Below, piece after piece: positions 334-25,095 of a DNA stretch of 64,000 bases; within the stretch, counting starts at the first letter, position 1, and each line of letters starts with the position of its first letter. The DNA is from Macrostomum lignano (lineage: Eukaryota). The notes beneath the pieces were generated by a model. That model was not told the origin of the DNA. It saw only the letters and a program-made list of their open reading frames with translations, and made no database searches. The DNA lies in the NCBI GenBank assembly GCA_002269645.1, contig NIVC01000749.1, forward strand, positions 1-64,000, in the 5' to 3' direction. A program made the position numbers and the translations under genes.

Positions 334-420
334 AGCTTTTATTTGTTTATTTTATTGTTCTGTTTTTTTATTTTCTCAATGATAAGTAAACGACTTGTGT
401 TATAGCACTGGATATTATAT

Positions 421-1799: not shown

Positions 1800-2175
1800 C
1801 TGCAACTCGTTCGCCTGTACAATTCGCCTCATCCAGACATCTCGGTCCTCAGCAGCGAGAAACGTAGTCTTTGGATCCGAGAAACTGCTAGACAACACGT
1901 TACCCAGCGAAACGTTCTTGAATCCCTCCGACTGTCTGATGTCATCGTAGTTGGGAATGTTGATTCCAAGTGGCGGCTCGCTGCTAGCAAAAGTCACAAT
2001 CTCCAGCGCAGTGAAGTCAGGCTGCAGAAATTTGTCCTTTTCATAAGCAGCTGGCCACGGAAGCAGCGGCAGAAACTTCTCAGCGTTGGAAACGAGAGCG
2101 TTGAACTTGGCGCTCTGCTCTTTGTTCACCACGGCTACGAAGCTTTCGAATTCGCCGCGAACTCCGAATGGATCT
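1800..2175 (-). CDS. DPP3: Dipeptidyl peptidase III, copy A, exon 4
   Basis: [18 protein letters not shown]...[23 protein letters not shown]; AG acceptor at 2177-2176, GT donor at 1799-1798; 376 nt, same length as copy B exon 4. Confidence 0.9.
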
Positions 2176-3098: not shown

Positions 3099-3397
3099 CT
3101 GTAGGACTCGATGAAGCCCATGTAGGTCTCCACAGCCGGTCCCTTGTCGCGAATCCAGGCCCTCGACCCGGCCTTGTGCTCGTCGATGCTGCCGCCGGCG
3201 AACGAAGCCGCGTAGCGACGCAGCATCTCCGCTTGGTTGGCGTTGAGCGCGGCCGCTTCGGCGTTGCGCAGATGCGGCAGCGCCAGCGACATCAGCTCGC
3301 GGTAGTCGCCCCGCTCGACACTGAACTTGCCGCTGCGGCCGCTGGCCTCGTCGGTGAAGTCGGTCGGCTCGGCCACGACGCTCGACTCTGCCGCAGC
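3099..3397 (-). CDS. DPP3: Dipeptidyl peptidase III, copy A, exon 3
   Basis: RGDY...GSIDEHKAGSRAWIRDKGPAVETYMGFIESYR; canonical AG/GT; 299 nt; phases compatible with exons 2 and 4. Confidence 0.92.
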
Positions 3398-3696
3398 CTG
3401 ACGGATGAGTCAGAAATGAGCGATGGGGTTGCCCACTGGTTTTTAATTAGCGCGGCTCTTAAAAACAATTTCTGAATCTGAAGAGCCACAATATTTTGTA
3501 TTGATTTTATCGCCAGGTTATCGATCGCAACTCAGATACCATTCAGTATAAACACGAGCCACACTGAGCAGCTGACCGGTGAAGCGAGGCTTATGTTGTA
3601 AAGAGAATCCCATTAGAGAAAATTCGCACCTGCACGATCCGATAAGAGCCTCCGTCAGCACAATTGAACAGCCTCTAATTAATCTAAATTTCGCAC

Positions 3697-3958
3697 CTGC
3701 ACGATCCGATAAGAGCAGCCGCCTGCAGACTTGAACAGCCTCGTGTTGTAGGCGCTGATCTGCCGGCTGTCCAGAAATGCTTGCGCCAGTTTCGCGTCAG
3801 ACTCGTTGCAGTTGTCAGAGAAATAGGCGGTGATCCCGGCTGTGCCGAGGCCCAGCTGCCTGTTGCGCTCCGTGAGGCTGCTGGCAGCAGCTCGAACGCG
3901 TTGCCAGGCAACCCGGACTCGCTCGCTGGAGGCGTGCGCCTCCGAAGCCGTGATGATC
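3697..3958 (-). CDS. DPP3: Dipeptidyl peptidase III, copy A, exon 2
   Basis: IITASEAH...LGLGTAGITAYFSDNC...DAKLAQAFLDSRQISAYNTRLFK; canonical AG/GT; 262 nt. Confidence 0.92.
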
Positions 3959-4008
3959 CTGGATTTTACCAACAAAAACTAGCTAGAGTTTAACAGTTAA
4001 AGGCTAGC

Positions 4009-4277
4009 GAGCGAGAGAGGAGAGAGAGAGGAGAGAGAGAGAGGAGAGAGAGGAAGAGAGGGAAGAGAGAGAGAGAGGGAGAGAGAGAGGGAGAGAGAGA
4101 GAGGAGAGAGAGAGAGGAGAGAGAGAGGAAGAGAGGGAAGAGAGAGAGAGAGGGAGAGAGAGAGAGGGAGAGAGAGAGAGAGGAGAGAGAGAGGAGAGAG
4201 AGAGGAGAGAGAGAGGAGAGAGAGAGGAAGAGAGGGAAGAGAGTGAGAGAGGGAGAGGAAGAGAAAGAGAGAGAGAG
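4009..4277 (+). repeat. Compound (GA)n-type microsatellite in DPP3-A intron 1
   Basis: Almost pure G/A tract of ~270 bp; the homologous tract in copy B (38088-38132) is only ~45 bp. Confidence 0.95.
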
Positions 4278-4460
4278 CTCTTGGCATCCTCTGTTCTGAT
4301 GTCTATAGCCGAACTAGCAACTTTTTGCCTTTTTATCAAATTGCTCATAAGATCATACACATATATATGCAGCCAAGGTATTTCAACTCAGCGAAGACAG
4401 CAAGTCACGTGACAGCAATCTGCGCAGCCACAAATGAACGAGAACATAGATAATACTCAC

Positions 4461-4831
4461 TTGTCGAGCGCCTCCTCAGATAGATCCGGCAGAATTTTCG
4501 TGTCGCCAAATGATTTATAGTTGCCCAAGTTGCCCAGCACCTGAGTGGCGTACATGAGAAATGCGTCCCAGTCCGCATCGGAGACGCCAGCTTTGCAGGC
4601 GGCTCGCAGCTGCTCAGGCGTCTGTCGCCGGAACACCGACTGCAGCACCAGGAAGAGTCCGGGAGACTCAGCGCTGGTCTGGTGCAGGCAGATCAGGCCG
4701 CCTATCCAAGAGGCCCGGTACAGGTGATAGGCGTACGCCTTCTCAGCCTGGCTCAGCTTCTCAAATGCGGGCCCGCAGGCCAAAAAAGTCACCGGGGCGT
4801 CTGTGGGCACCGTGTAGAGAGATCGGTCCAT
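4461..4831 (-). CDS. DPP3: Dipeptidyl peptidase III, copy A, exon 1 (in-frame upstream ATG at 4990 would add 53 aa)
   Basis: MDRSLYTVPTD...YAYHLYRASWIGG...QTSAESP...NLGNYKSFGDTK; donor GTGAGT at 4460; 371 nt, as in copy B. Confidence 0.92.
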
Positions 4832-5669
4832 AACTGGCTGCTGAGTTGCTTGGAGACTCGCTGAGAACAGAGCTACTTGCTGCACTGGTTGCTGGGTGGG
4901 TAGCGAGACTGCTGCTGCTGCTGTGCTTGGCAAGGTTCCAAATCGAGAGGCGGCTGCCACAAGCGGACGAAGCGACGACTTCAAGAACATAAATAAATTG
5001 TTGAGACATTCAATAGTAATCACAAGACATGCTTTACCGTAAAATGGGAGTTGCTGAGATGCAAGGACTCAAAGAGGTTTCATTCTTTTTTATCCCAATT
5101 TTAAATCTGACAATAGTGTCCATGCAAAGCTTTTTTTATGCAGTCCACTACACTAGAAGGTATGTCATAGAGAAGCTTAAAACCTATTCACCTTAGTGTT
5201 TATAAAAAGCGAAAATAAAAAATGTTCAACAAACTTAATGGAATCGATAAGGTTTTATTACTTGGCCAGCTCAGAAACCGGGCAAACGATTTGACAACAA
5301 AAATCGAACAATAATTCGTAGAAAAAAGACTATTTCCACTTTTTGTTTGTCTTTTATAATTGTCTTCTAGCTTAACAATTAGCAGCAGTTGACGGCATTT
5401 AGGAGCAGAATTGGCAGACTGGTTACAAAGTAAGCATATTAAAAACTACAATTGGTTTACGGCAAAACGCCAAAACATACGAGTAACTACAAAGTCTATT
5501 AGTAACTTATTTTAATTTTTCTGTTTTCTTAAATCTGCCAAGTGTCACTCAGGACTATCAATTTTGAATTATAAGACTAAATCAACAGTCAATTTTAAAA
5601 TTATGATAACTATTTTGAGTTCGATCCATCAACATGGAATAAATCAGCCAGACAACCGAATCCGCGTGC

Positions 5670-7596: not shown

Positions 7597-8160
7597 TAGT
7601 CATTTTAGAATTTGTGGTTGCGTCTAAATTTGTCTAATTGACTCATTTATGTGACTCGACAGTTGTCTGTCTGTCGCCATACAGTCGTTTGAGTCGTTTA
7701 AACGATGAATTCGATTGGGATAAGTGCTACCTAGAAACTTAGCCCAGATGTCAAAGGCTCATTGTGGGAATTGCAGAAATACTGTGGCTCAGATGCTTTG
7801 AGTCAAAACTCATACGCTCGTAGAGGATCTGATATCTCAGGCTAGATAGCTGGCTTTCAGAGCATGGATGCTTTTTTGCTTTAAACCATTGTCCTTAAGA
7901 AATTAGTAGTGACTCTTCAAGGTCAAAACCTACATCTATATAAGCTCGAAGTTTATACAAAAAAATGTGGCAGGTGCAGATTGCTAGTTGGAATTTTAAC
8001 ATTGCATTTGCCATGCCAAAATGACATCAACTTTTTTTCAGACAAATGTCTACACAGCTAGTAAAAACAAGCTAAACCACATTGGCCTCGACACTACTGC
8101 AACAATATAAAGGTGACAGTAGAGATTACGACAGGCACTGAACAGTAAAACAAAACTCAC

Positions 8161-8580
8161 CTGTCCGGCTTCCAGCAGAGCGCGCAAAATAGCGAATCGA
8201 GCCCGACTGTGCGCCTGACGCCAGGTGCCGCCATTCTCAGGTGAGTACATCTCTAACGAGGCCACCCCGGCCCTGGCCATGCACAGCCAGTTCACGTAGA
8301 TCACCTCGTCGGCCTCTGCTTTGTCCGGATGGCCGAACACGGCCAGCACTTCGGGCACGTCGCACAGGTAAACGCCAACGCACTCGGCGCGGCACTCTTC
8401 AAAAGCCGACGCCAGATTGCTAAATTTGCCATCCCAGGTTTCGCCGACTTTGTACCAGCTGGCAACCGGCTTGCCAGTGACCAGATCTACCACCGAGCTC
8501 GGGTCGAAGTTGAACTTGCCGTCAGAGTCCTGCTTGAACAGCTTGCCGCTGCCGTGGCCAAGGAGTTCGTGCAGGCCTAC
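8161..8580 (-). CDS. DPP3: Dipeptidyl peptidase III, copy B, exon 5 (catalytic exon)
   Basis: VGLHELLGHGSGKL (M49 hexapeptide HEXXGH), EECRAEC and WRQAHSRAR; canonical splice sites; 140 codons. Confidence 0.97.
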
Positions 8581-8699
8581 CTGTTCAAATAGGCCGCAGA
8601 TAAGAGAAGTTGATGAAGCAAGTTCGCAAGAGTTAAAATTACGAGTAAAATAGACCGAACTAGACAAACTAAACGAGCAAATACATATACAAATTGTCT

Positions 8700-8968
8700 C
8701 AGTGCTCTGGTGAGGCGCTCTGATGTGCCAGAGGCCCAGGCTCGATTCCAAGTTCAGTCACATCGACTTGGGTCTCCTCGTGCAGTTAGCGCCCTTAAGT
8801 GCCGACCCCCCCCCCCCAAGCCACCGTGAAGTGTACATGCCTAACGATAAATAAAGTCAGGGCCGCTGATCAGGGGAGTTGGCGGAATGGGCAGTAATGC
8901 CTCTCACGGGTTGCAGGATAATTTCGCTTAAAGTGCATCAGGTTGCACACAACCTCTGCCTCTGGTAA
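8700..8968 (+). mobile_element. tRNA-derived SINE (family 2), diverged copy
   Basis: B-box-like ggctcgattccaag; body collinear with the SINE at 26185-26551 (gtgaagtgtacatgcctaacgata, ggcggaatgggcagtaatgcctctcac). Confidence 0.7.
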
Positions 8969-11334: not shown

Positions 11335-12720
11335 GTGAGATCCGACTACGACACACCCAAGCCAACCGCTCTTTCGAGAACGTCGGCCAGCAACTACGAC
11401 GAGATCAACATGTTCAACGAGCGAGACGAGAGCCGGTGCAGCAGCCGGCTAGATCAGCACGTCAGCAGTTCGAGGCCTGCGGCAGCAGACGCCGCCGCGG
11501 CAGCAGCAGTGAGCAACGACTTCTGTCAGCAACCGACGCCGAGGCGAGGTGCGAGAAGCGATGTTCCCGACGACCCACCAGACGATCTTTTGCAAGGCCT
11601 GGACAACATTGGCCAGAACATCACGAACCAGGACGTGAGGACCATGACTGCAGTCCTGCAGCAACAGATGGAGCGGACCGTGAGTAAATAAGTTAAGATT
11701 TTTAAATTTACTGCAAGTCAGGGCATTCATGTCTGGCTTGCCGCGTTCGAGCAGCGTTGCAATGTGGAGCGCATCGTCGACCCGTTCGAGATGAAGCAAC
11801 ACCTCATCGCGAGTCTTGACTTAGCTACTGCGTATACTGCCTTGCTTGGTATGAATCTTCCGCGCTTCGCCAGTACGAGGAGGTTAAACAACGTCTGATA
11901 AAGCGATTTGCCCGTCATGGTGGTGCTGATGAGTACCGAGAATTGCTGCGACGTCGTCAAGGCAAGAATGAGTCAGCAGAAGAGTTTGCTGACGCCTTGA
12001 GAATTCTTGGTGAACGTGCGTATCCTCGAATGCACCCTGAAGACCGCGAGAAGGAACTTGCCGATCAATTTCTTGCTGGTATCCGGACGACTCAAGACTT
12101 GCGTGAACGGCTTTACTGGATTCGCCCAAATAATCTTCTCGCCGCGATTCGTGAACTACGACGACTAGAAGGCGCCAAAGAGTTGGCGCAGCGATCCGCT
12201 CAACCCCCGGTTCGGATGTTTGACGGGGAGCAGGACGGCGACCCGAAGCCCGACGTCACCGCCCAAGCCTTGCTAACTCCAACCGATTTGATCGAGAAGC
12301 AGCAGCGACTGCTTGATCACCTGGTGCAGCGTGACCAACAGCAGACAGCAAGCCCGTCATCGAAGGCTGTGATCTGCTACGGATGAGGACAGCCCGGTCA
12401 CCGAAGTGCACAATGCCAGTTTCGCCAGAACCAGGGAAACGGCCAGCCGGAGAGCGACAACGGCACCACCCTCCGAGAGGTCCAAGCCAAGGCTACTTGG
12501 CAGACTCCGAGAGATCACCAGAAGAAGAGAATGTCGGCTGTGCAGGCGCCAATGCCCAGTCCGACAGTCGCTCGTCAGTAAGTGACGCGGAGTGCGGAGG
12601 TTTCGTGGACACCTCCCTGAATAAAAAAATCCATGCGCATGAGGCCGATCCGTACGTCACAGGCCGAGTAGCGAGTCGAGAGGTCCCTTTCTTGCTAGAC
12701 AGCAGCAGCCAAAAAAAATT
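11335..12720 (+). pseudogene. Gypsy gag-protease remnant
   Basis: Gag helical-domain motifs, CCHC knuckle with a Cys-to-stop change, GGGAAAC at the gag end, and YVTGRV...VPFLLDS; frameshifts present. Confidence 0.75.
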
Positions 12721-14692
12721 TCCTTGGTTCGTCAACCTGGGCCGCTATTACACCTCGGATGCCTCGTTGTATTATATCGCATGCTATATTCCCGATTGCG
12801 TAACTATGTATGATGGGACGCAGCTCCCTCTTGCTTGCAGGGTGTCCGCCGCGTCAAGCAGATCTCTCTAAAGGGCCAGGCTGCCCCGCAGGTGCCCATC
12901 TCCGACGGGATCGCCCGCAGCATTGCCATGATTCACAAACAGGTTGAGGCAGACATGGCTTAGGAAGCCGCAGCCGCCAACCAGGAGCAGTCCAAGCCCA
13001 CGCCAGCTAGCCTCGAAACGACGGGCCGTGAGCATCGCCGTTCCCGAACTGCAGCTCACATCTTCATAGACCTGACAGAGCCGGAGACTCCGATGCCTCG
13101 TCCCGAGAGCGAGATAACCCAGGCCGGCTCTTCCGTCACTGAGGTCGTGGCGAAGAGTGTCGCTACAGCTTCAGCATCACCGATCAGCGGCAAGCGGGTC
13201 AGCGGCGTTGGTGACCAAGGCCGAGCGACGAGACGCCCGACCGGAGACGTCCGCTGACGCTGGCGGACCACTGGCGGACACTAGTTTCTTTTGTAGGGTC
13301 GGCTAGGAGCGTCGGATAGAGCCGGCCTCACCACCTCGTGAGGACGAGACCTGACTGCCAACGGTCCCAGAGCCCGAGGTCTCGGAGGACCCAGAGCAAG
13401 CCGAGGCTGCCTGCCAGACCGAAGACCTCCCCGAAAGCCGAGATCCCTATGCGGCCGCCTGGACCGAGCTGGCTACGGAGGTCCGCCGGGCCCTGGCCCC
13501 CGGCCATTCGGAACCCCCAGCGCCGCCGAATTCGCCGGATCCGCAGGCGGCGGTCTCGGGAACGGCCAGAGACGACGATGGAGAGCCAGTGCCGGCGAAC
13601 CTCGCGCCAGAGGTCCAAGCCGCCGTCAATCACTACATCAAGGCGGTGGATTACCGGGCTCAATTACTGACGGGCGCCGCTCAGCTGGGCACCCTGCCAA
13701 CCCTTGCGGGGTGGCCACGGTGGGCCAGCCTCCGTGCCCTGAGTGACGACGACCGATAGCGGCTGATGGACGAGGCCGCCCAGCTGTCCGCGCCAACCCT
13801 GCGAAACCCACCGCACCGGGAGACGGCCCGCACAGTCACCCGCTTGATCGCTGGCCGGGCTCCCGAGGTTCCGGACATTGTGCGGATGTGCGACCGGGTA
13901 CCAAGGCTAAGCCGCGTGTGCTCATGACAGTGACCAGGAGAGACTAGTTAATCGGCACTGGCCCTTTCCCCTTTTAACTTGCCTAGGCCTGTGCTTGAAG
14001 GCGCATTTCGTTCGCTCCCAATCTCTAGCCCCTTTTTCTGCAGTCCAGGGGCAACTGCATTGCGTACAAGCCTTTGAATCTCGGGTTTTCTTTACGGTTA
14101 GCCCGGCCGCATTTAACCCGTAAATTCGCCTTTTACGAGGTATTTTCCCCTTTCTGCCTTCCTCGGAAGCGCCCATTGATCCCGCGGGCTCTGCCAATTG
14201 ACTCCCGGCATCCCACCATATTTAGGCGCTAATTTTCTGGGCCGGCGCCCCCAACCTGCTACTGAATTTTAATTTTTGCTGCCATTGTGCCCGAGAGGCT
14301 GGCCCGAGAGGCTTGCCAGCCTCTTCGTTTTTAATCTCCATTTTAGGGCTCTGCCTTGGCGCGGGCAACAACTTTTAGGCCTCCGGTGCTGCGTAGGTTT
14401 GCCAACTTTTAAGCAACGTCTGCTGCCCTATTTTTTAGCCTCCCGGGCTCTGCCAGCCTTTAAGGCATCCCGCCATATTTAGGCGCCTTTGCTTCGCAGG
14501 GGCTGGCGCCCCCCGCTACGCCATTTCGGGCTACAATCCCGGCCTTGGCCCAGCCGTGCAATAATTCTGCAAGACAATTTTTAAGTTTGCTAAATAAATT
14601 TGCCAGACATTTTTAAGTAAACCCATTATTTTCAACTATTAAATAAAAGCACGCTCCGCTTTCACTTCGCCTCTTTATTTGAACGGGAAGAG

Positions 14693-15131: not shown

Positions 15132-16247
15132 ATATCCAGTTCTTCAGACTCTGATGATTTTCGTTTGGGTCTAGAAGATGCAACCCATGGACATGCAGAA
15201 GATTGGCAACCACGAGTGACTTCGAGTCCAATTCTATTTGACCAATCAGATTCACACTCAAGTGGGTCATTGCAGGACTCGAGCATCTCGTCGTCAGAAG
15301 GCTTGTTTGGGAATGCGACAATGAGTGTTGGTTAGTTTAAAAGACGGTTTACATCACTAGTTGCAAGCAAGCGTGTCAATGACACAACTGCCGCTGCCTT
15401 TCTTGGCCACTGTGCCAAAACGTTAGCATGATAAGCAGTCACTTCCTCAATCTTGCAACTTACAAAATCGCTTCTCCAGCCATGCAGCTTGGCACATAAC
15501 ACAGCATATGGCGGAACCAGCCGCCACACTTCACAGACATGACTTCTGCCGTCGCCTCCTCCGCAATTCTATTCAGAACAACTTAGGCCAACAACTTAGG
15601 CCAACTTAGGCCAACCTAGTGCGATACATTCTTGCACCTTAATTTTTCCTCTTAATACTTTTGTGCCTATTTTTCATTTTTAACTATAATTTCAAAGCAC
15701 AACGTACATGTACATTCGTTAGTTTCTTTTTTGTTTTTAGTTGTATGTTTTCATACTTTCTTTAATATTTGGAATTTTATCAAAATATCAATTATGTTAA
15801 CCAATCACGTTTTTATATTTCAACTGTCTTGTTAGTTTTTAAAGAAAGACAAATATACATCTTCTTGCATCGAATATCAACTTTTTCAAAAGTTGCAACT
15901 GCGCCCTTGTAATGTGCCCTTCGGTTTGAATTAAAAAAATTTGAATATGTGGCTAGTTCGTCAGTTATTTTTTGGTCCTCACTGAAGCTCTCTCGATGTA
16001 TAGGCTTCATAGGCTCTCATTGTTAAGCGTGTTGCGTTTGCTTAATAAACAAAATTTTTATAAACGTTCTAGACGTTCTGTCAATTTATATATATAAATA
16101 TATACATATACAATATTGTATATGTATATATTTAGCAGAGAAAGCGAGGATCAGCGATTGGCTATTTGCTCAGTGCACTACTCCAAGTAGGATAGTACAA
16201 AAGTTATGTAACATGATAATTGCAATAAAATTGCTATTTACAAGAAA

Positions 16248-17326
16248 GGGGATGTCAACTTAAGCACCAGAATGGAGCCCGAAGTTCAGCTCCGGACCAA
16301 ACCGACTGCAATCGATAACTTGTCGGCCCAGACGACTAGAATCGCCGAGACATCCCATCCGGCTCCCTTCCTTGGGGTCCCAGGGGATAAAGGGGATAAA
16401 ATGGGGATCTCATGTCAACTTAAGGCTCTGGAATGGAGCCCGAAGTTCAGCTCCGGACCAAACCGACTGCAATCGATAACTTGTCGGCCCAGACGACTAG
16501 AATCGCCGAGACATCCCATCCGGCTCCCTTCCTTGGGGTCCCAGGGGATAAAGGGGATAAAATGGGGATCTCATGTCAACTTAAGGCCCTGGAATGGAGC
16601 CCGAAGTTCAGCTCCGGACCAAACCGACTGCAATCGATAACTTGTCGGCCCAGACGACTAGAATCGCCGAGACATCCCATCCGGCTCCCTTCCTTGGGGT
16701 CCCAGGGGATAAAGGGGATAAAATGGGGATCTCATGTCAACTTAAGGCTCTGGAATGGAGCCCGAAGTTCAGCTCCGGACCAAACCGACTGCAATCGATA
16801 AGTTGTCGGCCCAGACGACTAGAATCGCCGAGACATCCCATCCGGCTCCCTTCCTTGGGGTCCCAGGGATAAAGGGGATAAAATGGGGATCTCATGTCAA
16901 CTTAAGGCCCTGGAATGGAGCCCGAAGTTCAGCTCCGGACCAAACCGACTGCAATCGATAACTTGTCGGCCCAGACGACTAGAATCGCCGAGACATCCCA
17001 TCTGGCTCCCTTCCTTGGGGTCCCAGGGGATAAAGGGGATAAAATGGGGATCTCATGTCAACTTAAGGCCCTGGAATGGAGCCCGAAGTTCAGCTCCGGA
17101 CCAAACCGACTGCAATCGATAAGTTGTCGGCCCAGACGACTAGAATCGCCGAGACATCCCATCCGGCTCCCTTCCTTGGGGTCCCAGGGGATAAAGGGGA
17201 TAAAATGGGGATCTCATGTCAACTTAAGGCTCTGGAATGGAGCCCGAAGTTCAGCTCCGGACCAAACCGACTGCAATCGATAACTTGTCGGCCCAGACGA
17301 CTAGAATCGCCGAGACATCCCATCCG
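16248..17326 (+). repeat. 161-bp tandem array, ~7 units (left arm)
   Basis: atggagcccgaag recurs at 16272, 16433, 16594, 16755, 16915, 17076 and 17237. Confidence 0.97.
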
Positions 17327-17641
17327 GTTTCAAGTGACGAAGCTCTATTCTATTCGAATATCGCATTAGCGGGTGTATTTTATTTTAGCTATTATATATT
17401 GTTTGCATTGTAATATTTCCGTCGTTTAATTTTTCCGGATTTTTGAGAATGTTTTCGCGGTTTTGATTTGACCACTTTAGGCGAGAGATTTTTGATACTG
17501 TGCGTCAAGTATTTGTAGCATTAGTTTAAGTGATATATTTTAAGTGATATATTAATGAAGTTAAGGTTTTGGTCAGTTTTTCTTACTTAGTTTTATGACA
17601 GGTGCAGATTTGTTGCAGATTGCGTTTTATACTTGCTAGTA

Positions 17642-20578
17642 ATGTCCGATTTTACTTGCTCTCAATGTGGTCATCAATTCAGCAAAGCAGCCAATTTGAA
17701 CCGACATCTCGAAACGACTAGATGTGGTCGCTGCTCATCTGAATCGTCTGGAGCCTTCGCGCCTCCGAGAAACGCACGAGAGGCGCTTCAGTTTCTTGCG
17801 GTCGGTGGTAAGTATGTGAAAGTTTTTTTGAACCCAAACCTTTTTCCACGAACCGCAAATGAGAAGGAGTTCAAACGTATTTGCGGTCTTAGCTATAGTG
17901 ATTTCGATAGCTTCTCAGAAATGTTACCAGAAGTATCTCGCCTTCGTATTTTGACAAAGCCATCTCGAATATTTTTGTACCTGAAGAAGCTTCGCCAAGG
18001 TTGCAGCTTTCAATCATTAGCTTTCGATTTCAACATTTCTGCCCAAAGAGCATGCGACATTTTTTGGGAGATTGCCAAGGAGCAGTACCTACGGGATCCA
18101 TATCAACCGAGGTCGATAGCGTCGACTCCGATTCAGACTCTGCTTGAGGAAAATGTAGTACGCGATCAATTTATTCTCGGTGTATTTCACACACTACTCA
18201 AAGGCAAGAAGCTTGTTCTTCTAGTGGGTGATCATACTTACTTTTATCTCCCTAAGAGCAGCTCACACCACACGCAAATTCGAACTTACTTTTCCGGCAA
18301 GAAAATGAATGTGAACAAAAAAATGGCGGTTGTCAACAGTAGAGGAAAAATTATCTACACCGCTCCCCTTACCGCCGCTATCTCGCCAACAATGGGCGAT
18401 GGGAATTTGACTGCAATGCAAGTTGACATGGAGGCTGAAGGACTAATAGAGCCCATTTTGTTGCGCATTCTGTGCTCTGTACAGAAAGATTATCACGTTA
18501 TTGGCATTTTCGACAAAGGTTACAGCCACCAACTTTGTTCACCAACTTCGGTTAACTTCCGCGACTTTATAGAGACTAATAGTAAAGGCTGCACGACGCT
18601 TCTATTTCCGACCAGTCCAGGTGACCGAGTTCTAAACGAGCAGTTTGAATTTGTAAATAATGAGGCTCCTGTTGGTGACCGATCAATACCAGGAAAGCTT
18701 ACATCAATCGAAGCAAATACAAGTCGCTGCGCTACGCTTTTCCGTTATCTCGTAGAATGTAGCTTTGCTGCAATCAAGCAGGACAAATGCATAAATGAGC
18801 GACAGGAGCCGTACCAATGGCTACATGCCCCAGAGTTTACCGAACGCAGCCGGCTCGATGTTGTTATTGAAAACTCCATGGCAAAATTCAACCGTTCGCA
18901 TCCAGGATTTCAAGCTACAAGGAGTCTGCCGCCGTCATGGTCAGATTGCTCCATGTTCGAATACGGACGGAACTTTGCTAAACGTCTTTTCATTGCGAAT
19001 GAGCTAGACGAAATTGAGCAACTTGAGTACAATTGCGATTTGACTCGAATACCAACGAGTTCTACCCGAAAATGGACAGCAGTGGATCCCCTGGACCCTG
19101 AAAGTTCAGGGTTCCCCAGCGTTGACGAAAGAAATCTGGAAGAGCTTAGCATCGGCCCATACCACGTTCTTCAGTCAAAACGCTACATCGAAAACGTCAG
19201 AGTTCATGAGGTGCTCAGTAGCTACGCTGGAGACTCGTGGCGCGATTTCGAATTGTTGATTTCTGAACTGCCAAGCCATTTAAAATGCTGGAAGTTTCAT
19301 CAGCGAGCGCCACCAAAGGGGTGGAGCAGTAAGTTTGGAGAATGGAGGCCATCTTGGATATATTTAGCCGTTCTTCATTCCCGTCATCGGTCAAAAACTT
19401 ACCGAGTTGTCCTTCGTATTTGCGAAACTGCAAGTGGTAACCGATTCGGATTTCGTGACTCGGGGCTGCTGCGTCTGCATGGCTACTTTTCATCCTCAAA
19501 GGCCGGAAGCAGGACAGCAGGGTGTGACAGTCATGTTATGGCTGTGGTTAGAATGCTAGGCTGTTATGCATATCACCCCGAAAGCTACAACATGTGCGGC
19601 AGCAGCTTCCGATTTATTGACAGTGCTTTGCCAAAAGCACTGATTGCCAATCTTTACAATGATCAATCTGGTGGTCATCCAGCTCCAAATGCACCTCGCA
19701 GAGACAGTGCTGAATCGCAGCAAGATGAACAGAGGCACAGTTCAAATGCTACTGGTTCATTGAATTCGCCGAAGAAGTTATTTGGGTTGCCAAATAATGG
19801 CCTGCAGTGCTACGCAAATGCAGCAGTGCAATTGTTTCTCTGCCTGCATTCTAATGGATGCATTTTAAAAGAGACTAGCAACGACCAAGTCCATCGAGAG
19901 CTGCTTCGTCTTCTGACGGAGATGCAACAGCGGTCTGCAACAGTCACTCCACTGTTAACGGCAGTTCGGTTGCAACATCCAGATTCATTTCAAACAAATC
20001 AGCACCATTGCGTCAACGAATTTGTTCAAACGCTTCTAATACATCTGGAATTTCTGTCATCAGATGCTTTCACAGAATTTTCACTCATTCAAACTTGTCG
20101 GGATTGCCAGCGCACAAGTGCTGAAGTTCCTGTTGGCACAATCGATAACAGAGTGATTTGCATTCCTCTCTGTCAATTTGAGCGCTCAATTGTCAGTTTA
20201 GACAAAATCTTCTGCGCTTTTGTCGCTCCTCAGGTAGTGAAATGTTCGGACGCCAATTGCCTGGGCGATTGTAATCAAGAGATCGTAGTAACACCTGGAA
20301 AGTTTACCCTGATATATCTTGATCGTGCTAGTATGGATGGCCACCTTAAGCTTCAAACTCCTGTAAGCTTTTCTTCAAGGTCAGGGGGTGTTTCTACACT
20401 TGGTAAGCCAGTGGCCACAATATCACACCATGGAAACCGACTGAAATCGGGACATTTCACAGCAAGCGTACTGAGCTGTGTGTGGACGAGAATTGACGAC
20501 ATGAAAGTTACGTCAGACTATAACCCGTTCGTACGTGAGCCTGAGTGCATCGTGCTCGTTGCACTTTTAAACTCGTAA
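17642..20578 (+). CDS. C2H2-HTH-DDE (DDE_Tnp_4-like) transposase fused to a degenerate SWIM finger and a USP/peptidase C19 deubiquitinase domain (978 aa from the ATG)
   Basis: CSQC...RHLETTRC; LRQGCSFQSLAFDFNIS (HTH); D in GDHTY (18230), D in IFDKGY (18512), E in LVECSF (18755); KAGSRTAGCDSHV (SWIM-like); GLPNNGLQCYANAAVQ (Cys 19808), CRDC...CSDANC, SHHGNRLKSGHFTA (His 20453), WTRIDD (Asp 20495). Uninterrupted ORF. Confidence 0.88.
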   Translation: MSDFTCSQCGHQFSKAANLNRHLETTRCGRCSSESSGAFAPPRNAREALQFLAVGGKYVKVFLNPNLFPRTANEKEFKRICGLSYSDFDSFSEMLPEVSRLRILTKPSRIFLYLKKLRQGCSFQSLAFDFNISAQRACDIFWEIAKEQYLRDPYQPRSIASTPIQTLLEENVVRDQFILGVFHTLLKGKKLVLLVGDHTYFYLPKSSSHHTQIRTYFSGKKMNVNKKMAVVNSRGKIIYTAPLTAAISPTMGDGNLTAMQVDMEAEGLIEPILLRILCSVQKDYHVIGIFDKGYSHQLCSPTSVNFRDFIETNSKGCTTLLFPTSPGDRVLNEQFEFVNNEAPVGDRSIPGKLTSIEANTSRCATLFRYLVECSFAAIKQDKCINERQEPYQWLHAPEFTERSRLDVVIENSMAKFNRSHPGFQATRSLPPSWSDCSMFEYGRNFAKRLFIANELDEIEQLEYNCDLTRIPTSSTRKWTAVDPLDPESSGFPSVDERNLEELSIGPYHVLQSKRYIENVRVHEVLSSYAGDSWRDFELLISELPSHLKCWKFHQRAPPKGWSSKFGEWRPSWIYLAVLHSRHRSKTYRVVLRICETASGNRFGFRDSGLLRLHGYFSSSKAGSRTAGCDSHVMAVVRMLGCYAYHPESYNMCGSSFRFIDSALPKALIANLYNDQSGGHPAPNAPRRDSAESQQDEQRHSSNATGSLNSPKKLFGLPNNGLQCYANAAVQLFLCLHSNGCILKETSNDQVHRELLRLLTEMQQRSATVTPLLTAVRLQHPDSFQTNQHHCVNEFVQTLLIHLEFLSSDAFTEFSLIQTCRDCQRTSAEVPVGTIDNRVICIPLCQFERSIVSLDKIFCAFVAPQVVKCSDANCLGDCNQEIVVTPGKFTLIYLDRASMDGHLKLQTPVSFSSRSGGVSTLGKPVATISHHGNRLKSGHFTASVLSCVWTRIDDMKVTSDYNPFVREPECIVLVALLNS

Positions 20579-21261
20579 AAGCATTTTTAGCGAAAATACA
20601 ATTGTTTTAAGCGAGTGTACTGTACGTTTTGTATTGCAGATTTTAAAGGACATGCAGATTAAGAAACAATGTCATCTCACGCATTCTTTACGTACCATAG
20701 GTTACATGTGAAGATAATTCAGACTGACATCAAATAACAAAAGCTTTGAATTAGTTGTTTCAATTTCTTTTAGACTCACAATTAACTAAAAATTGGAAGT
20801 ATTTTTTACTGAAGCAAAGAACTTAAACCCAAAAACCGTTTCTTAGGACTGAGAAACTTTTGCAATTATGATTTTACTAAGCTTTGCGTGAGAGGCGTTA
20901 CTTTATTTGCTTAAAAACGTGTGCTGCTTTGCATGACATGCTTTGTTTTTATTACTTTGATAACTTGTACAGCTTTGCATGATATGCTTTGTATCCATTA
21001 CGTCATAACTTGTACAGCCTTGCGTGATATTCTTTATTTTACCAATATACATGGTTTCGGTTTATCGTCAAAAGTTCTGCTTACTAATAACCAAACGAAT
21101 TTACAAGTTAATTTTTTCAAACTGAGTTTCCAGATCAGCATTTTTAACAGGTTTCGATACGAGCAAATCATTTTTATTACTTAACAATCAATATATAATA
21201 GCTGAAATAAAATACACCCGCTAATGCGATATTCGAATTGAATAGAGCTTCGTCACTTGAA

Positions 21262-23309
21262 ACCGGATGGGATGTCTCGGCGATTCTAGTCGTCTGGGCC
21301 GACAACTTATCGATTGCAGTCGGTTTGGTCCGGAGCTGAACTTCGGGCTCCATTCCAGAGCCTTAAGTTGACACGAGATCCCCATTTTATCCCCTTTATC
21401 CCCTGGGACCCCAAGGAAGGGAGCCGGATGGGATGTCTCGGCGATTCTAGTCGTCTGGGCCGACAACTTATCGATTGCAGTCGGTTTGGTCCGGAGCTGA
21501 ACTTCGGGCTCCATTCCAGAGCCTTAAGTTGACATGAGATCCCCATTTTATCCCCTTTATCCCCTGGGACCCCAAGGAAGGGAGCCGGATGGGATGTCTC
21601 GGCGATTCTAGTCGTCTGGGCCGACAAGTTATCGATTGCAGTCGGTTTGGTCCGGAGCTGAACTTCGGGCTCCATTCCAGGGCCTTAAGTTGACATGAGA
21701 TCCCCATTTTATCCCCTTTATCCCCTGGGACCCCAAGGAAGGGAGCCGGATGGGATGTCTCGGCGATTCTAGTCGTCTGGGCCGACAAGTTATCGATTGC
21801 AGTCGGTTTGGGCCGGAGCTGAACTTCGGGCTCCATTCCAGAGCCTTAAGTTGACATGAGATCCCCATTTTATCCCCTTTATCCCCTGGGACCCCAAGGA
21901 AGGGAGCCGGATGGGATGTCTCGGCGATTCTAGTCGTCTGGGCCGACAAGTTATCGATTGCAGTCGGTTTGGTCCGGAGCTGAACTTCGGGCTCCATTCC
22001 AGAGCCTTAAGTTGACATGAGATCCCCATTTTATCCCCTTTATCCCCTGGGACCCCAAGGAAGGGAGCCGGATGGGATGTCTCGGCGATTCTAGTCGTCT
22101 GGGCCGACAACTTATCGATTGCAGTCGGTTTGGTCCGGAGCTGAACTTCGGGCTCCATTCCAGGGCCTTAAGTTGACATGAGATCCCCATTTTATCCCCT
22201 TTATCCCCTGGGACCCCAAGGAAGGGAGCCGGATGGGATGTCTCGGCGATTCTAGTCGTCTGGGCCGACAAGTTATCGATTGCAGTCGGTTTGGTCCGGA
22301 GCTGAACTTCGGGCTCCATTCCAGGGCCTTAAGTTGACATGAGATCCCCATTTTATCCCCTTTATCCCCTGGGACCCCAAGGAAGGGAGCCGGATGGGAT
22401 GTCTCGGCGATTCTAGTCGTCTGGGCCGACAAGTTATCGATTGCAGTCGGTTTGGTCCGGAGCTGAACTTCGGGCTCCATTCCAGAGCCTTAAGTTGACA
22501 TGAGATCCCCATTTTATCCCCTTTATCCCCTGGGACCCCAAGGAAGGGAGCCGGATGGGATGTCTCGGCGATTCTAGTCGTCTGGGCCGACAAGTTATCG
22601 ATTGCAGTCGGTTTGGTCCGGAGCTGAACTTCGGGCTCCATTCCAGGGCCTTAAGTTGACATGAGATCCCCATTTTATCCCCTTTATCCCCTGGGACCCC
22701 AAGGAAGGGAGCCGGATGGGATGTCTCGGCGATTCTAGTCGTCTGGGCCGACAACTTATCGATTGCAGTCGGTTTGGTCCGGAGCTGAACTTCGGGCTCC
22801 ATTCCAGAGCCTTAAGTTGACATGAGATCCCCATTTTATCCCCTTTATCCCCTGGGACCCCAAGGAAGGGAGCCGGATGGGATGTCTCGGCGATTCTAGT
22901 CGTCTGGGCCGACAAGTTATCGATTGCAATCGGTTTGGTCCGGAGCTGAACTTCGGGCTCCATTCCAGAGCCTTAAGTTGACATGAGATCCCCATTTTAT
23001 CCCCTTTATCCCCTGGGACCCCAAGGAAGGGAGCCGGATGGGATGTCTCGGCGATTCTAGTCGTCTGGGCCGACAAGTTATCGATTGCAGTCGGTTTGGT
23101 CCGGAGCTGAACTTCGGGCTCCATTCCAGAGCCTTAAGTTGACATGAGATCCCCATTTTATCCCCTTTATCCCCTGGGACCCCAAGGAAGGGAGCCGGAT
23201 GGGATGTCTCGGCGATTCTAGTCGTCTGGGCCGACAAGTTATCGATTGCAGTCGGTTTGGTCCGGAGCTGAACTTCGGGCTCCATTCTGGTGCTTAAGTT
23301 GACATCCCC
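21262..23309 (-). repeat. 161-bp tandem array, ~13 units, inverted (right arm)
   Basis: Reverse complement of the left array, with exact 161-bp periodicity from 21353 to 23285. Confidence 0.97.
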
Positions 23310-24174
23310 TTTATTGTAATCCTCATGCAAGTTATATGTAATTGACGTGCCATTTTTGTGCAGTTAAATTTCAAGAAAATATCCTACCGAAATTGCAACT
23401 AAAGTGCAATTTAGCTTAGGCTTCTCGCAATTAAAAAGAACAATTCACTTGTAATTCGCTTGCAAGAATGGCGAAATTATTGCGTCTCCGACTGCAATTT
23501 TTGGTAATTCTGCGCAATTTTGTTTATCTAGTGTTACAAAATATTTTTTTAAAAATGGTGCTTCATATCGGCAGCGGATTATTTATGCTTCTAATTTCTT
23601 TTATCCGCGACTTTTACTGCCTGCAATGGAACGTTTTAATTTGTTCAGTTGCAACTTTTATGTTCATTCTTATTCTGCAATACATAATAATACTATAGTA
23701 CACTATACAGTTTTTGTGCGGCTCCAAAATACTTCCTCGTCGAATAGTTTCTTTTGTAGTGACCTTCGCGAAAGTTCTATACCGTATGATGTTTATTTCC
23801 TGAAAATTCTGCAATACAGTACGAGTTAAATTCTAGAAAATTCTTTATCTAGCTATCTCTAATCACGTAGTAAATATTTCTACTCATTAAATATTTAATT
23901 ACTGTAATTCGTCATTATACAAAATATGAATACCGTACGTACGATACTTACTATATAATTTGTTTTAATGCGCTAGAACGATTCCAGAAATTTCCGGAAG
24001 GTCAAATTATAGTATAAATATACAGTAGCCAAACCAGCATTTTTCTCCAAGCCTCTTCGATATTCAAGCAACTCAAGTGCTAACCAAAGAAGCAAAACAA
24101 AGGCGAACCACCGCCTAGCTCTACCTTCTTCATTTCCTAGCCGCTACAATTGGTCCGGTGAGGCGACACCAAAG

Positions 24175-25095
24175 ATGTCCAACGAAGACTCAATTCAACC
24201 CGAAGCCGACGCACTCCAGGGTCAGGACGCCGCGAACGACGACGCTGCGCCAACTGGTCAACCAGCAGTGGCAGCTGTAGCTGTCAAGCCACCACCCTTC
24301 TATCGGACAAACCCAGAAGCGTGGTTCTGCACTCTGGAGGCGCAGTTTAACTTAGCGCACATCACCTCTGAGAAAACTAAGTTTTTTCATCTGGTCGCCC
24401 ATTTACCCGAGGACATCGGCTCGGTCTTCCTGTCCAGGGATTCGCTATCGTCAGCTAATGCGCAGAGCTACACCAACCTGAAGAAAGGCGTCTGCAACAT
24501 GCTGCAGAAGAGCCAACAAGAAAAAATCAATGAAATCCTAGCAACCTCAGACCTCGGCGGAGATAAACCTTCGATCTTTCTCCTGGTCGCCAAGATGTCG
24601 CAGTGCGGACTAAATTTTACGACGTGCCCGGATATGGTCAAAGCAACCCTGCTCCGCTGCCTACCCAGCGAGTTCCGCATCGCACTGTCGGGTTTCCAAG
24701 GCCAATCCCCTACGGAGATCGCCACCATCGCCGACGCGATGTTCAGCGTCCAGAGTACCGGCGGGAAGATCAACGCAGTAGGGCAGCTCGGAGCAGCGCA
24801 GCCTGTCGCTGCCATCCCAGCTCTGCACACCCACGGCTCATCTGCGACACGGGGGCCACCTCGCAACGATGTGCCACCGTTCCGACCTGGTCAACGTCCA
24901 GTCGTCTGCCGCGAGCACGTCTTCTACGGCCTGCAGGCGCACACATGCCGCCGGTGGTGTCAGTTTCCGAAGTTGCCGGGACACCAGCCACGCGTCCTTA
25001 GCAACCGCGAGTCAACGTCCGCCCAGTCTCGCTCTAACTCGCCTGTGCGTCGCGGTCCGGGAAACTGGGCGGCGCTGCCCAACACGCGGCAGTAA
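24175..25095 (+). mobile_element. Gypsy-type gag ORF (306 aa), pol deleted
   Basis: KPPPFY..NPEAWF..LEAQF...TKF, LGGDKPS, LP..RIAL and CREHVFYG..AHTC..WC finger; GGGAAAC near the end, then an abrupt switch to AT-rich DNA. Confidence 0.82.

What the first reader, a model, noticed from the sequence alone, without database searches (positions are those of the whole stretch)
17642..20578. Intact cut-and-paste transposase fused in one ORF to a USP-family deubiquitinase
Seen in the sequence: one uninterrupted 978-aa ORF. The N-terminal two-thirds is a PIF/Harbinger-ISL2EU-type transposase with all three acidic residues (D 18230, D 18512, E 18755). The C-terminal ~265 aa has the USP Cys box (GLPNNGLQCY, with the oxyanion Asn), a zinc-ribbon finger (CRDC...CSDANC) and a His/Asp box (GHF...WTRIDD). 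Established: protease capture is known for other transposons, such as Ulp1 SUMO proteases in Mutator and Zisupton and cysteine proteases in Helitrons. I do not recall a USP fused to a PHIS-type transposase. Inference: the DUB could shield the transposase from degradation or strip ubiquitin from chromatin at its own ends or target, acting as a built-in anti-silencing module. Intact residues in both enzymes suggest selection on the fusion.
Basis: partly seen in the sequence, partly recalled or inferred. Interest (0 to 1): 0.92.

Follow-up and report, generated by a model that had tools for sequence, protein, structure and literature searches.

The report
Spy-related DNA transposon with transposase-deubiquitinase fusion
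A flatworm cut-and-paste transposon encodes one protein that joins a DDE transposase to a ubiquitin-removing (USP) protease; distant relatives carry the same fusion, so it is old and conserved, but transposons carrying such proteases were already known.

Summary
Window 17642-20578 (+) is one 978-aa ORF. Its parts are an N-terminal zinc finger, an HTH, a DDE core (D197/D291/E372), a degenerate SWIM-like remnant, a disordered linker and a USP domain (aa ~715-978).

The USP passes Pfam UCH. Its model (pLDDT 91.6) matches only solved USP catalytic domains. It keeps the oxyanion Asn718, Cys723, His938, Asp952/953 and the zinc-ribbon cysteines.

The ORF lies in a ~7.1-kb element (about 16238-23319). 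Its long inverted ends are arrays of a 161-bp unit, 6.7 copies on the left and 12.7 on the right. The host is probably a Macrostomum flatworm.

The fusion is not a one-off. At least eight lineages at 20-35% identity, mostly from marine metagenomes, encode the same uninterrupted transposase-USP ORF. They form a 100%-supported clade next to DDE_Tnp_4 transposases, one family of which I showed to be Spy-type (AAA|GGA...|TTT). One relative carries Ulp1 at the same C-terminal position.

Transposon-borne OTU, VTD, Ulp1 and UCH proteases are published, as is one Trichomonas IS5-like transposase + C19 protein. I therefore rate this a new variant of a known kind. What the USP does is inferred only.

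The parts
16238..23319 (+). Whole element (~7.08 kb): autonomous cut-and-paste DNA transposon. The exact termini lie within 16238-16248 on the left and 23309-23319 on the right.
   Evidence: The outermost inverted-repeat arms end at 16238 and 23319, and nothing similar lies beyond them. It is the only copy in the window.
16238..17405 (+). Left long terminal inverted repeat. It holds the terminal motif TTACAAGAAA-GGGGATGTCAACTTAAG, then 6.7 tandem 161-bp units (16252-17327), then 78 bp of inner inverted repeat (17328-17405).
   Evidence: TRF gives period 161, 6.7 copies, 98% matches. The inverted arms are 97-99% complementary. Each unit repeats the GGGGAT...TGTCAACTTAAG end motif.
21185..23319 (-). 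Right long terminal inverted repeat. It has the same structure in inverted orientation, with 12.7 units (21263-23305). It has six units (966 bp) more than the left arm.
17642..20578 (+). Single 978-aa ORF encoding the transposase-USP fusion protein (stop codon included).
   Evidence: Relatives carry the same fusion as one ORF.
17651..17725 (+). N-terminal C2H2-like (C2HC) zinc finger, aa 4-28, probably DNA-binding.
   Evidence: Pfam zf-C2H2 is weak, 18.6 bits. PDB zinc-finger matches are weak. The finger is conserved in P0001 and in the upstream ORF of L009.
17951..18067 (+). Helix-turn-helix of DDE_Tnp_4-type transposases, aa 104-142.
   Evidence: HTH_Tnp_4 scores 22.7 bits, below the cut-off of 27. 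It aligns to the HTH of Pfam-positive relatives.
18209..18775 (+). DDE catalytic core, aa ~190-378. D197 is at 18230-18232, D291 at 18512-18514 and E372 at 18755-18757, with R368-x3-E372.
   Evidence: D197, R368 and E372 are invariant and D291 is conserved in at least 90% of sequences. hhalign against the DDE_Tnp_4 group gives probability 100%, E 6.5e-46. In the model D197 lies on a strand, D291 follows a strand and E372 lies in a helix.
19475..19576 (+). Degenerate SWIM-like region, aa ~612-645. It keeps GC(629)DSH(631) but lacks the first CxC found in relatives.
   Evidence: Alignment and hhalign. The closest relative L001 shows the same loss. Relative P0072 gives a weak, below-cut-off SWIM match in Pfam (17.0 bits, cut-off 19.6).
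19670..19777 (+). Disordered Ser/Gln/Arg-rich linker, aa ~677-712, between the transposase and the USP.
   Evidence: pLDDT is 30-40 for aa 677-700 and below 50 for the first 10 residues of the USP model.
19784..20575 (+). USP (peptidase C19) catalytic domain, aa 715-978. N718 is at 19793, catalytic C723 at 19808, the zinc ribbon C819/C822/C868/C873 at 20096-20260, catalytic H938 at 20453, and D952/D953 at 20495-20500.
   Evidence: Pfam UCH scores 37.5 bits against a cut-off of 23.9. The AF2 model has pLDDT 91.6 and pTM 0.89. The top 50 Foldseek hits are all USP catalytic domains, best E 2.3e-17, TMq 0.73. These residues are invariant or nearly so across the fusion family.

Best explanation
This is an apparently intact autonomous cut-and-paste DNA transposon of the PHIS (PIF/Harbinger-ISL2EU-Spy; Pfam DDE_Tnp_4) superfamily, sitting in what is probably a Macrostomum flatworm genome. 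It belongs to a deep clade, undescribed as far as I could find, that is sister to a group containing a Spy-type family.

Its single protein is built as zinc finger - HTH - DDE nuclease - degenerate SWIM - flexible linker - minimal USP deubiquitinase.

Shown here:
- The domain identities, the intact catalytic residues of both enzymes and the USP fold.
- Long inverted ends built from a reiterated 161-bp unit that repeats the terminal motif. These are probably arrays of transposase-binding sites.
- Retention of the fusion in both deep branches of the clade, with one nested loss.

Inferred:
- The transposase binds the reiterated end motifs through its zinc finger and HTH, and excises and reinserts the element by DDE chemistry.
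- The USP, held on a ~35-residue tether, removes ubiquitin locally. The most likely substrate is the transposase or transpososome itself, which would protect it from proteasomal turnover. An alternative is ubiquitin marks on chromatin or repair factors at the break.
- A relative carries a SUMO protease (Ulp1) at the same position. That suggests the selected activity is removal of ubiquitin-like modifiers in general.
For: - ORF and motifs.
- USP fold.
- Transposase homology: the window protein hits Pfam-positive DDE_Tnp_4 proteins directly (P0062, E 1.6e-8 in a library of 1.8 billion proteins; Pfam). hhalign gives probability 100%, E 6.5e-46 over 459 columns. The DDE columns are conserved.
- The transposase model is confident (pLDDT 87.9) with a disordered linker.
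- Element ends.
- Recurrence of the fusion as one ORF: P0022, P0010, P0033, P0046, P0303, P0311, P0315, and P0001+P0007, which overlap.
- The P0010 and P0033 families are multi-copy and intact, with clusters of 20 members each.
- Trees: the fusion clade has 100% bootstrap, USP sits on both deep branches, and the USP-less P0003/4/5 nest with USP-bearing P0010 at 98.5%. The USP tree repeats the ((P0046,P0303),(P0315,P0311)),P0022 topology at 93.5%.
- Purifying selection in a relative family: omega 0.16 for the transposase part and 0.48 for the USP part.
- Ulp1 at the same position in P0127.
- Sister group shown to be Spy-type in one family.
- Host: a DPP3 exon is 95% identical to an M. lignano protein, and M. 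lignano has fragments of the family.
- Precedent for active transposon DUBs: PMC9741609.
Against: - There is no biochemical or expression evidence. Only one copy is in the window, so activity, copy number and per-domain selection for this family are untested.
- The left and right arrays differ by six units and the SWIM-like finger is degenerate, so this copy could be immobile.
- In the relative family the USP omega of 0.48 rests on 16.5 synonymous and 31.5 nonsynonymous changes. I did not test it for significance and it may not differ from 1.
- The USP of P0010 is not placed with the others in the USP tree (15% support), so a single capture is not proven.
- Trees are neighbour-joining on very divergent sequences.
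- The transposase model has no significant match to a solved structure (best E 0.035).
- The termini and TSD cannot be fixed from one copy.
Confidence: 0.75

Rival explanations
1. The USP acts on chromatin or the DNA-damage response rather than on the transposase. Tethered at the excision or integration site, it would strip ubiquitin from histones H2A/H2B or from repair factors. That could bias break repair, blunt checkpoint signalling or counter silencing.
For: Bao et al. 2010 proposed a DNA-repair role for transposon Ulp1 and OTU domains (PMC2836005). A related transposase carries a SUMO protease at the same position. From established knowledge, not tested here, the DNA-damage response uses both ubiquitin and SUMO. 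The USP is a minimal core on a flexible tether, which suits local action.
Against: The sequence contains nothing that points to nucleosome or repair-factor recognition, and there are no accessory domains. Erven et al. 2022 favour protection from proteasomal degradation for Helitron DUBs (PMC9741609). No data here separate this reading from the self-protection reading.
Confidence: 0.25
2. The USP-fold domain is not a ubiquitin hydrolase in practice. It may cleave another ubiquitin-like modifier, or act as a non-catalytic ubiquitin-binding or recruiting module.
For: The domain is very divergent, scoring 37.5 bits against Pfam UCH where cellular USPs score 110-130 bits. USP18, an ISG15-specific enzyme, is among the top structural matches. 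Constraint is relaxed relative to the transposase part (35% versus 51% identity to the sister family).
Against: The oxyanion Asn, catalytic Cys and His, the Asp pair and the zinc-ribbon cysteines are invariant or nearly so across lineages at 20-35% identity. That conservation is hard to explain without catalysis. USP2, 46, 12, 4 and 21 score the same as USP18.
Confidence: 0.12
3. The window copy is an immobile relic, or a domesticated host gene, rather than an active transposon.
For: There is only one copy in 64 kb. The exact-product look-up found nothing on record, and the word-index homology search found only P0001. The arrays are unequal and the SWIM-like finger is degenerate. M. lignano relatives appear as fragments inside gene models.
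Against: The inverted arms are 97-99% identical and flank an intact 978-aa ORF. The neighbourhood is rich in transposons. Relatives are multi-copy and intact. A domesticated gene would not normally keep kilobase-long inverted repeats.
Confidence: 0.15
4. The USP is a recent passenger captured by chance in this one element.
For: None beyond the general fact that transposons capture host fragments.
Against: The same in-frame fusion occurs in at least eight lineages at 20-35% identity, with conserved catalytic residues and partly congruent trees.
Confidence: 0.02

Closest known systems
Spy transposons (PHIS superfamily; Han et al. 2014, PMC4122938; active cgSpy, PMC11304231)
   Same: The transposase is homologous from the HTH to the SWIM-like region with a DDE_Tnp_4 group (hhalign probability 100%). 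One family of that group (P0101/P0324) has Spy hallmarks: AAA|GGAGGATG...|TTT ends without a TSD. Like Spy, the window element has a single ORF, an invertebrate host and long TIRs. It reads ...GAAA|GGGG...CCCC|TTTA... at its ends.
   Different: It forms a separate clade with 100% bootstrap. It has an N-terminal zinc finger, a larger DDE core with long insertions, a C-terminal USP and TIRs made of tandem 161-bp units; Han et al. saw no subrepeats in long Spy TIRs. The terminal GGGGATGT does not fit GGANNNNG. The 10 bp outside GGGG are also inverted-complementary, and ATAAA recurs inside the unit, so an AAA|TTT insertion is not established.
ISL2EU and PIF/Harbinger groups of PHIS (PMC4482050)
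   Same: Same DDE_Tnp_4-type catalytic core with the R-x3-E signature, the same HTH, and AT-rich flanks.
   Different: There is no THAP domain and no room for a second ORF (YqaJ in ISL2EU, Myb in Harbinger). The flanks are not AT (ISL2EU). For the Harbinger TWA duplication they read TTA on the left and TAA on the right, which do not match as a direct repeat.
Trichomonas vaginalis XP_001314237.1: transposase_11 (pfam01609) + Peptidase C19, mentioned by Bao, Kapitonov and Jurka 2010 (PMC2836005), citing Gladyshev and Arkhipova 2009
   Same: An IS4/IS5-type DDE transposase joined to a USP-family (C19) domain. This is the only published mention of such a combination that I found.
   Different: It is a one-sentence mention of a protist protein. 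I could not fetch the sequence or the cited paper, so whether it belongs to this clade is unknown.
Helitron-like elements carrying UCH, OTU or VTD deubiquitinase domains (PMC11417382, PMC9741609)
   Same: These are transposon-encoded deubiquitinases, often in the transposase ORF, with catalytic residues conserved. VTD activity was shown biochemically. Pfam UCH is stably present in HLE2 subgroups c and d. Hit P0130 here looks like a helicase C-terminus plus USP.
   Different: They are rolling-circle RepHel elements, not DDE cut-and-paste elements. In my tree P0130's USP groups with canonical USPs, not with the PHIS-borne ones, although support is weak.
Ulp1 (SUMO protease) fused to or carried by transposases: Mutator-like elements, Ginger1 (PMC2836005), Zisupton (from my own knowledge: Bohne et al. 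2012)
   Same: A C-terminal ubiquitin-like-modifier protease on a cut-and-paste transposase. A SWIM finger precedes the protease in Zisupton and in relatives here. P0127 in the sister group has DDE_Tnp_4 + Peptidase_C48.
   Different: The protease clan differs (C48 versus C19), and so do the transposase superfamilies.

Membership tests
PHIS superfamily (DDE_Tnp_4-type transposases) | Catalytic DDE triad in the conserved context, including R-x3-E | tested here: met
   D197, D291 and R368-x3-E372 sit in invariant or nearly invariant columns. The signature is described in PMC4122938.
PHIS superfamily (DDE_Tnp_4-type transposases) | Significant sequence or profile similarity to Pfam DDE_Tnp_4 (PF13359) proteins | tested here: met
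   The window protein itself has no PF13359 hit. However, phmmer hits PF13359-positive proteins directly. Relative P0006 passes PF13359. hhalign of A4 against A5 gives probability 100%, E 6.5e-46.
PHIS superfamily (DDE_Tnp_4-type transposases) | HTH_Tnp_4 (PF13613) upstream of the DDE core | tested here: inconclusive
   It scores 22.7 bits against a cut-off of 27. It aligns to the HTH of relatives.
PHIS superfamily (DDE_Tnp_4-type transposases) | Terminal inverted repeats flanking the transposase gene | tested here: met
   The arms are 16238-17405 and 21185-23319, 97-99% complementary.
Spy group | Insertion between AAA and TTT without target-site duplication | tested here: inconclusive
   The flanks read GAAA|GGGG...CCCC|TTTA. 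However, the inverted repeat continues 10 bp further out (9 of 10 positions), and ATAAA before GGGG also occurs inside the 161-bp unit. No empty site or second copy is available.
Spy group | Terminal 5'-GGANNNNG-3' motif | tested here: not met
   The terminus is GGGGATGT. The verified Spy-type relative has GGAGGATG.
Spy group | Transposase falls inside the Spy clade | tested here: not met
   The fusion clade is separated with 100% bootstrap from the group that contains the Spy-type family. This is a neighbour-joining tree without Repbase references.
ISL2EU group | N-terminal THAP domain, second ORF with a YqaJ exonuclease, and AT target-site duplication with GG termini | tested here: not met
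   The N-terminus is a C2H2-like finger. Only 684 bp of unique sequence follow the ORF and no other ORF is present. The flanks are not AT.
PIF/Harbinger group | 3-bp TWA duplication and a Myb/SANT ORF2 | tested here: not met
   If the TIR starts at CAAG, the flanks are TTA on the left and TAA on the right, which is not a direct repeat. There is no second ORF.
USP / peptidase C19 deubiquitinases | Pfam UCH (PF00443) above the gathering score | tested here: met
   37.5 bits against a cut-off of 23.9, aa 715-958, profile positions 2-237 of 254.
USP / peptidase C19 deubiquitinases | Cys box with the catalytic Cys and an oxyanion Asn five residues upstream; His box (GH[YF]); Asp/Asn after W-x-x-[FI] | tested here: met
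   N718, C723, H938 and D952/D953 are present and conserved across the fusion family.
USP / peptidase C19 deubiquitinases | USP fold (thumb-palm-fingers) with a zinc ribbon | tested here: met
   The AF2 model has pLDDT 91.6. The top 50 Foldseek hits are all USP catalytic domains, E down to 2.3e-17, TMq 0.67-0.76. C819/C822/C868/C873 are present.
USP / peptidase C19 deubiquitinases | Isopeptidase activity on ubiquitin | not testable with these tools
   This needs a recombinant protein assay.
Zisupton superfamily | SWIM finger plus Ulp1 protease in the transposase; 8-bp target-site duplication (from my own knowledge) | tested here: not met
   There is no Peptidase_C48 domain, the SWIM-like motif is degenerate, and there is no 8-bp duplication.

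The most novel reading that the evidence does not exclude
An old, undescribed clade of Spy-related cut-and-paste transposons, found in flatworms and marine eukaryotic plankton, has carried a catalytically active USP deubiquitinase on its transposase for its whole history, while a relative in the sister group carries Ulp1 in the same place. If so, removing ubiquitin-like modifiers is a recurrent, selected requirement of DNA transposition, for example to escape ubiquitin-dependent restriction of the transposase or to damp break signalling. This compact single-ORF element would then be a tractable system to test why unrelated transposon classes (Helitrons, Ginger, Mutator, Zisupton, PHIS) keep acquiring such proteases.
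Probability: 0.4. Interest if true: 0.75.

Novelty: new variant of a known kind. Interest (0 to 1): 0.58.

Why it matters
Proteases that remove ubiquitin or SUMO have been picked up independently by several unrelated transposon classes, yet no one has shown what they do for transposition. This element packs the whole system into one intron-less 978-aa protein, with a transposase of a type whose Spy relatives work in human cells. Comparing wild type, C723A and a USP deletion in excision, integration and transposase half-life assays would test the idea directly. It also adds a deep new branch, with unusual tandem-repeat ends, to the PHIS superfamily. If the USP stabilises its own transposase, it could be of practical interest for transposon vectors.

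Tried and rejected
- A sequence-only search of the PDB with the whole protein gave only weak zinc-finger matches. The USP needed Pfam and fold comparison.
- Foldseek of the transposase model against the PDB gave nothing significant, only weak matches to Tn5 and P-element transposases and other nucleases.
- The two word-index homology searches with the ORF found almost nothing. The exhaustive representative search was what worked.
- The exact-product look-up for the window protein found nothing on record.
- The metagenome locus scan with the window protein found no relative.
- I looked for a second copy, a paralogous empty site, or solo 161-bp repeats in the window and found none.
- I tried to define the ends of relatives from their contigs. 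In L002, L003, L004-L009 and L016 I could not find both element ends. Only the Spy-type P0101 family gave clean ends.
- I looked for reference Spy or ISL2EU protein sequences in paper supplements and found none usable.
- Gladyshev and Arkhipova 2009 is not held.
- Rfam found no RNA family in the window.
- Rejected: the ~122-aa ORFs inside the 161-bp arrays as genes. They are reading frames running through a repeat.
- Rejected: ISL2EU membership, recent one-off capture, and a USP-less ancestor for the clade. The last is less parsimonious given.


Full report
**Observation.** Window 17642-20578 (+) is one uninterrupted ORF of 978 aa from its ATG.

- Pfam finds a USP-family domain above threshold: UCH PF00443, aa 715-958, 37.5 bits against a cut-off of 23.9.
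- Pfam also gives sub-threshold hits for HTH_Tnp_4 (aa 104-142, 22.7 bits against 27) and a C2H2 finger (aa 4-25). It gives no direct DDE_Tnp_4 hit.

**The USP domain.**

- An AlphaFold2 model of aa 697-978, built with an 18-sequence alignment, is highly confident (pLDDT 91.6, pTM 0.89).
- The 50 best Foldseek matches in the PDB are all USP catalytic domains, including USP2, USP18, USP46, USP12, USP4 and USP21. The best E-value is 2.3e-17 and TMq is 0.67-0.76.
- Across all transposon-borne USPs found here, at 19-36% identity to the window, the following are invariant or nearly so: the oxyanion Asn, the catalytic Cys and His, the DD pair, three zinc-ribbon cysteines, and a family-specific R895, W948 and P962.
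- The domain is a minimal core of about 265 aa without accessory domains. It is joined to the transposase by a disordered linker of about 35 residues.

**The transposase part.**

- An exhaustive search of 1.8 billion representative proteins gave 131 hits.
- The more distant hits (P0062, P0063, P0068, P0072, P0079 and others) are clear DDE_Tnp_4 proteins scoring 52-79 bits, usually with a sub-threshold HTH_Tnp_4 match and, in P0072, a weak sub-threshold SWIM match. Relative P0006 also passes DDE_Tnp_4.
- A profile-profile comparison of the window's clade (A4) with that group (A5) gives probability 100%, E 6.5e-46, over 459 columns running from the HTH through the DDE core to the SWIM-like region.
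- D197, D291 and R368-x3-E372 fall in the conserved DGTY, DRGF and R-x3-E columns. This matches the PHIS signature described by Han et al. (PMC4122938).
- A model of aa 1-700 is confident (pLDDT 87.9). It places D197 on a strand, D291 just after a strand and E372 in a helix. It has no significant match to any solved structure.
- The CxC...CxH SWIM-like motif of relatives is degenerate in the window protein and in its closest relative.

**The element.**

- The ORF lies between inverted arrays of a 161-bp unit. There are 6.7 copies on the left (16252-17327) and 12.7 on the right (21263-23305), 98% homogeneous.
- The inverted repeat runs from 16238 to 17405 and from 21185 to 23319, with nothing similar beyond. 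The element is therefore about 7.08 kb with one gene.
- Each unit repeats the terminal motif GGGGAT...TGTCAACTTAAG. The arrays are therefore probably multiple transposase-binding sites; this is an inference.
- The exact ends are ambiguous. The sequence reads ...TTACAAGAAA|GGGGATG...CATCCCC|TTTATTGTAA....
  - This could be a Spy-like insertion between AAA and TTT without duplication.
  - Against that, the outer 10 bp are also inverted-complementary (9 of 10 positions), and ATAAA before GGGG recurs inside the unit. The TIR may therefore start at 16238-16241, with a TA or no duplication.
- There is no second copy or empty site in the window.

**Host.** A dipeptidyl-peptidase 3 exon at 8050-8751 (-) is 95% identical to a Macrostomum lignano protein. 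M. lignano gene models contain fragments about 55-57% identical to this transposase. The window is otherwise rich in transposons: piggyBac, Tc1/mariner and reverse transcriptase.

**Is the fusion a one-off? No.** The same architecture occurs as a single uninterrupted ORF in several other lineages.

| Relative | Length | Source or locus |
|---|---|---|
| P0022 | 955 aa | L002 |
| P0010 | 1048 aa | L003, L009; 20 near-identical cluster members |
| P0033 | 1119 aa | 19 contigs, several of them Tara Oceans samples |
| P0046 | 1639 aa | L008 |
| P0303, P0311/P0313, P0315 | 1010-1380 aa | cluster members |

- The closest relative is split between P0001 (transposase, 51% identity) and P0007 (junction plus USP, 35% identity). 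The two overlap in L001.
- A neighbour-joining tree of the transposase core (454 columns, 200 bootstraps) puts all of these in one clade with 100% support, apart from the conventional DDE_Tnp_4 proteins.
  - USP-bearing members sit on both deep branches.
  - The USP-less P0003/4/5 have a 360-aa N-terminal extension instead, and no USP lies downstream in L010. They nest with USP-bearing P0010 at 98.5%.
  - This pattern favours one early capture followed by a later loss.
- The USP tree repeats the topology ((P0046,P0303),(P0315,P0311)),P0022 at 93.5%. The USP of P0010 is unresolved in that tree.
- Two diverged copies of the P0010 family give dN/dS of 0.16 for the transposase part and 0.48 for the USP part, the latter from 16.5 synonymous and 31.5 nonsynonymous changes. 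The USP is therefore constrained, but less than the transposase. The 51% versus 35% identity to the sister family points the same way.

**Relatives outside the clade.**

- One family of the sister group (P0101/P0324, five contigs) has clean ends: AAA|GGAGGATGCCC...GGGCACCCTCC|TTT, with the flanks differing between copies. These are the published Spy hallmarks: an AAA|TTT target, no duplication and a GGANNNNG terminus (PMC4122938).
- Other members of the sister group come from a springtail and a moth.
- The window's clade is thus sister to a group that contains this Spy-type family. It is not ISL2EU: there is no THAP domain, no YqaJ ORF and no AT duplication (PMC4482050). It is not classical Harbinger either, because there is no Myb ORF.
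- P0127, in the sister group, carries a Ulp1 SUMO protease (Peptidase_C48) at the same C-terminal position.

**Prior knowledge.**

- The two PHIS survey papers list no protease domain.
- Transposon-borne modifier proteases are nevertheless well documented:
  - Ulp1 in Mutator-like elements and Ginger1, and OTU in Ginger1 and Helitrons (PMC2836005).
  - VTD deubiquitinases in Helentrons, shown to be active (PMC9741609).
  - Pfam UCH stably carried by Helitron-like HLE2 subgroups (PMC11417382).
- Bao et al. 2010 also mention a T. vaginalis protein with pfam01609 (an IS4/IS5-type transposase domain) plus Peptidase C19. I could not retrieve that sequence or the cited paper.
- The general phenomenon is therefore known, and a DDE transposase joined to a USP has been noted once. 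A conserved, deep, Spy-related clade of such fusions in animals and plankton was not described in anything I could search.

**Mechanism.**

- Shown: two intact enzyme domains on one polypeptide joined by a flexible tether; reiterated end motifs; long-term retention of the fusion.
- Inferred: the zinc finger and HTH bind the reiterated motifs, and the DDE core cuts and pastes the element. The tethered USP removes ubiquitin locally.
  - I consider protection of the transposase or transpososome from ubiquitin-dependent degradation the most likely role, by analogy with the argument made for Helitron DUBs.
  - Action on chromatin or repair factors at the break is the main alternative.
  - The Ulp1 in a relative suggests that what is selected is removal of ubiquitin-like modifiers in general.
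- None of this is tested.

**Verdict.** I rate it a new variant of a known kind, with interest about 0.58.

Noticed in passing
window 16272-17369 (+) and 21221-23300 (-): Many overlapping ~122-aa ORFs (MEPEVQLRTKPTAIDNLSAQ...) are listed here. They are reading frames running through the 161-bp tandem repeat, not genes.
   Followed up: partly
window 8050-8751 (-): This is an exon of dipeptidyl-peptidase 3 (Peptidase_M49, 212 bits), 95% identical to a Macrostomum lignano protein. It identifies the probable host lineage. The 5% difference may mean a paralogue or a sister species.
   Followed up: partly
window 61682-63004 (-); 40271-40984 (-); 59326-60183 (+); 51790-53049 (-); 24175-25095 (+): Other mobile-element ORFs are present: a piggyBac-type transposase (DDE_Tnp_1_7, 216 bits), two Tc1/mariner-type DDE_3 fragments, a reverse transcriptase (RVT_1) in a GC-rich stretch (0.60) with a 419-aa antisense ORF at 52316-53575, and a DUF7041 ORF just right of the element.
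   Followed up: no
window 12001-14000 and 52001-54000: Two GC-rich islands (0.61 and 0.60) stand out against a background of about 0.46. The second coincides with the reverse-transcriptase ORF.
   Followed up: no
P0127 / L016:1690-4482: A 930-aa DDE_Tnp_4 transposase from the sister group carries a C-terminal Ulp1 SUMO protease (Peptidase_C48, 39.5 bits). The position is the same as that of the USP in the window protein. I could not define its ends.
   Followed up: partly
P0130 (455 aa, JGI metagenome): A helicase C-terminal fragment (weak UvrD_C_2 and Herpes_Helicase matches) is followed by a UCH domain (62.8 bits). This looks like the published UCH-carrying Helitron-like elements.
   Followed up: no
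L009:202-1944 and 2008-5154; L003:2-292 and 356-3502: In the P0010 family, the N-terminal zinc-finger part (a 580-aa ORF) and the transposase-USP ORF are in the same frame, separated by a stop at 1942-1944, with homology resuming at 1945. Most full-length members of the cluster are 1048-1050 aa and so seem to start after it. This could be a two-ORF organisation, readthrough or an inherited mutation.
   Followed up: no
L004:1568-2932 (and L005-L007): The P0033 family has an extra 454-aa ORF upstream on the same strand, with only a weak C2H2 match. The window element has no counterpart.
   Followed up: no
L013:1075-3991 (with L011, L012, L014, L015): This is a compact element of about 2.9 kb with a 722-aa DDE_Tnp_4 transposase and textbook Spy ends (AAA|GGAGGATG...|TTT). 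It occurs in five JGI metagenome contigs at 99.6-100% identity, so it appears recently active.
   Followed up: partly
L003:3359-3890: Downstream of the P0010-family ORF there are subterminal direct repeats (41-nt motifs spaced 60-72 bp apart, and a 198-bp duplication). Repeat-rich ends may be common in this clade.
   Followed up: no
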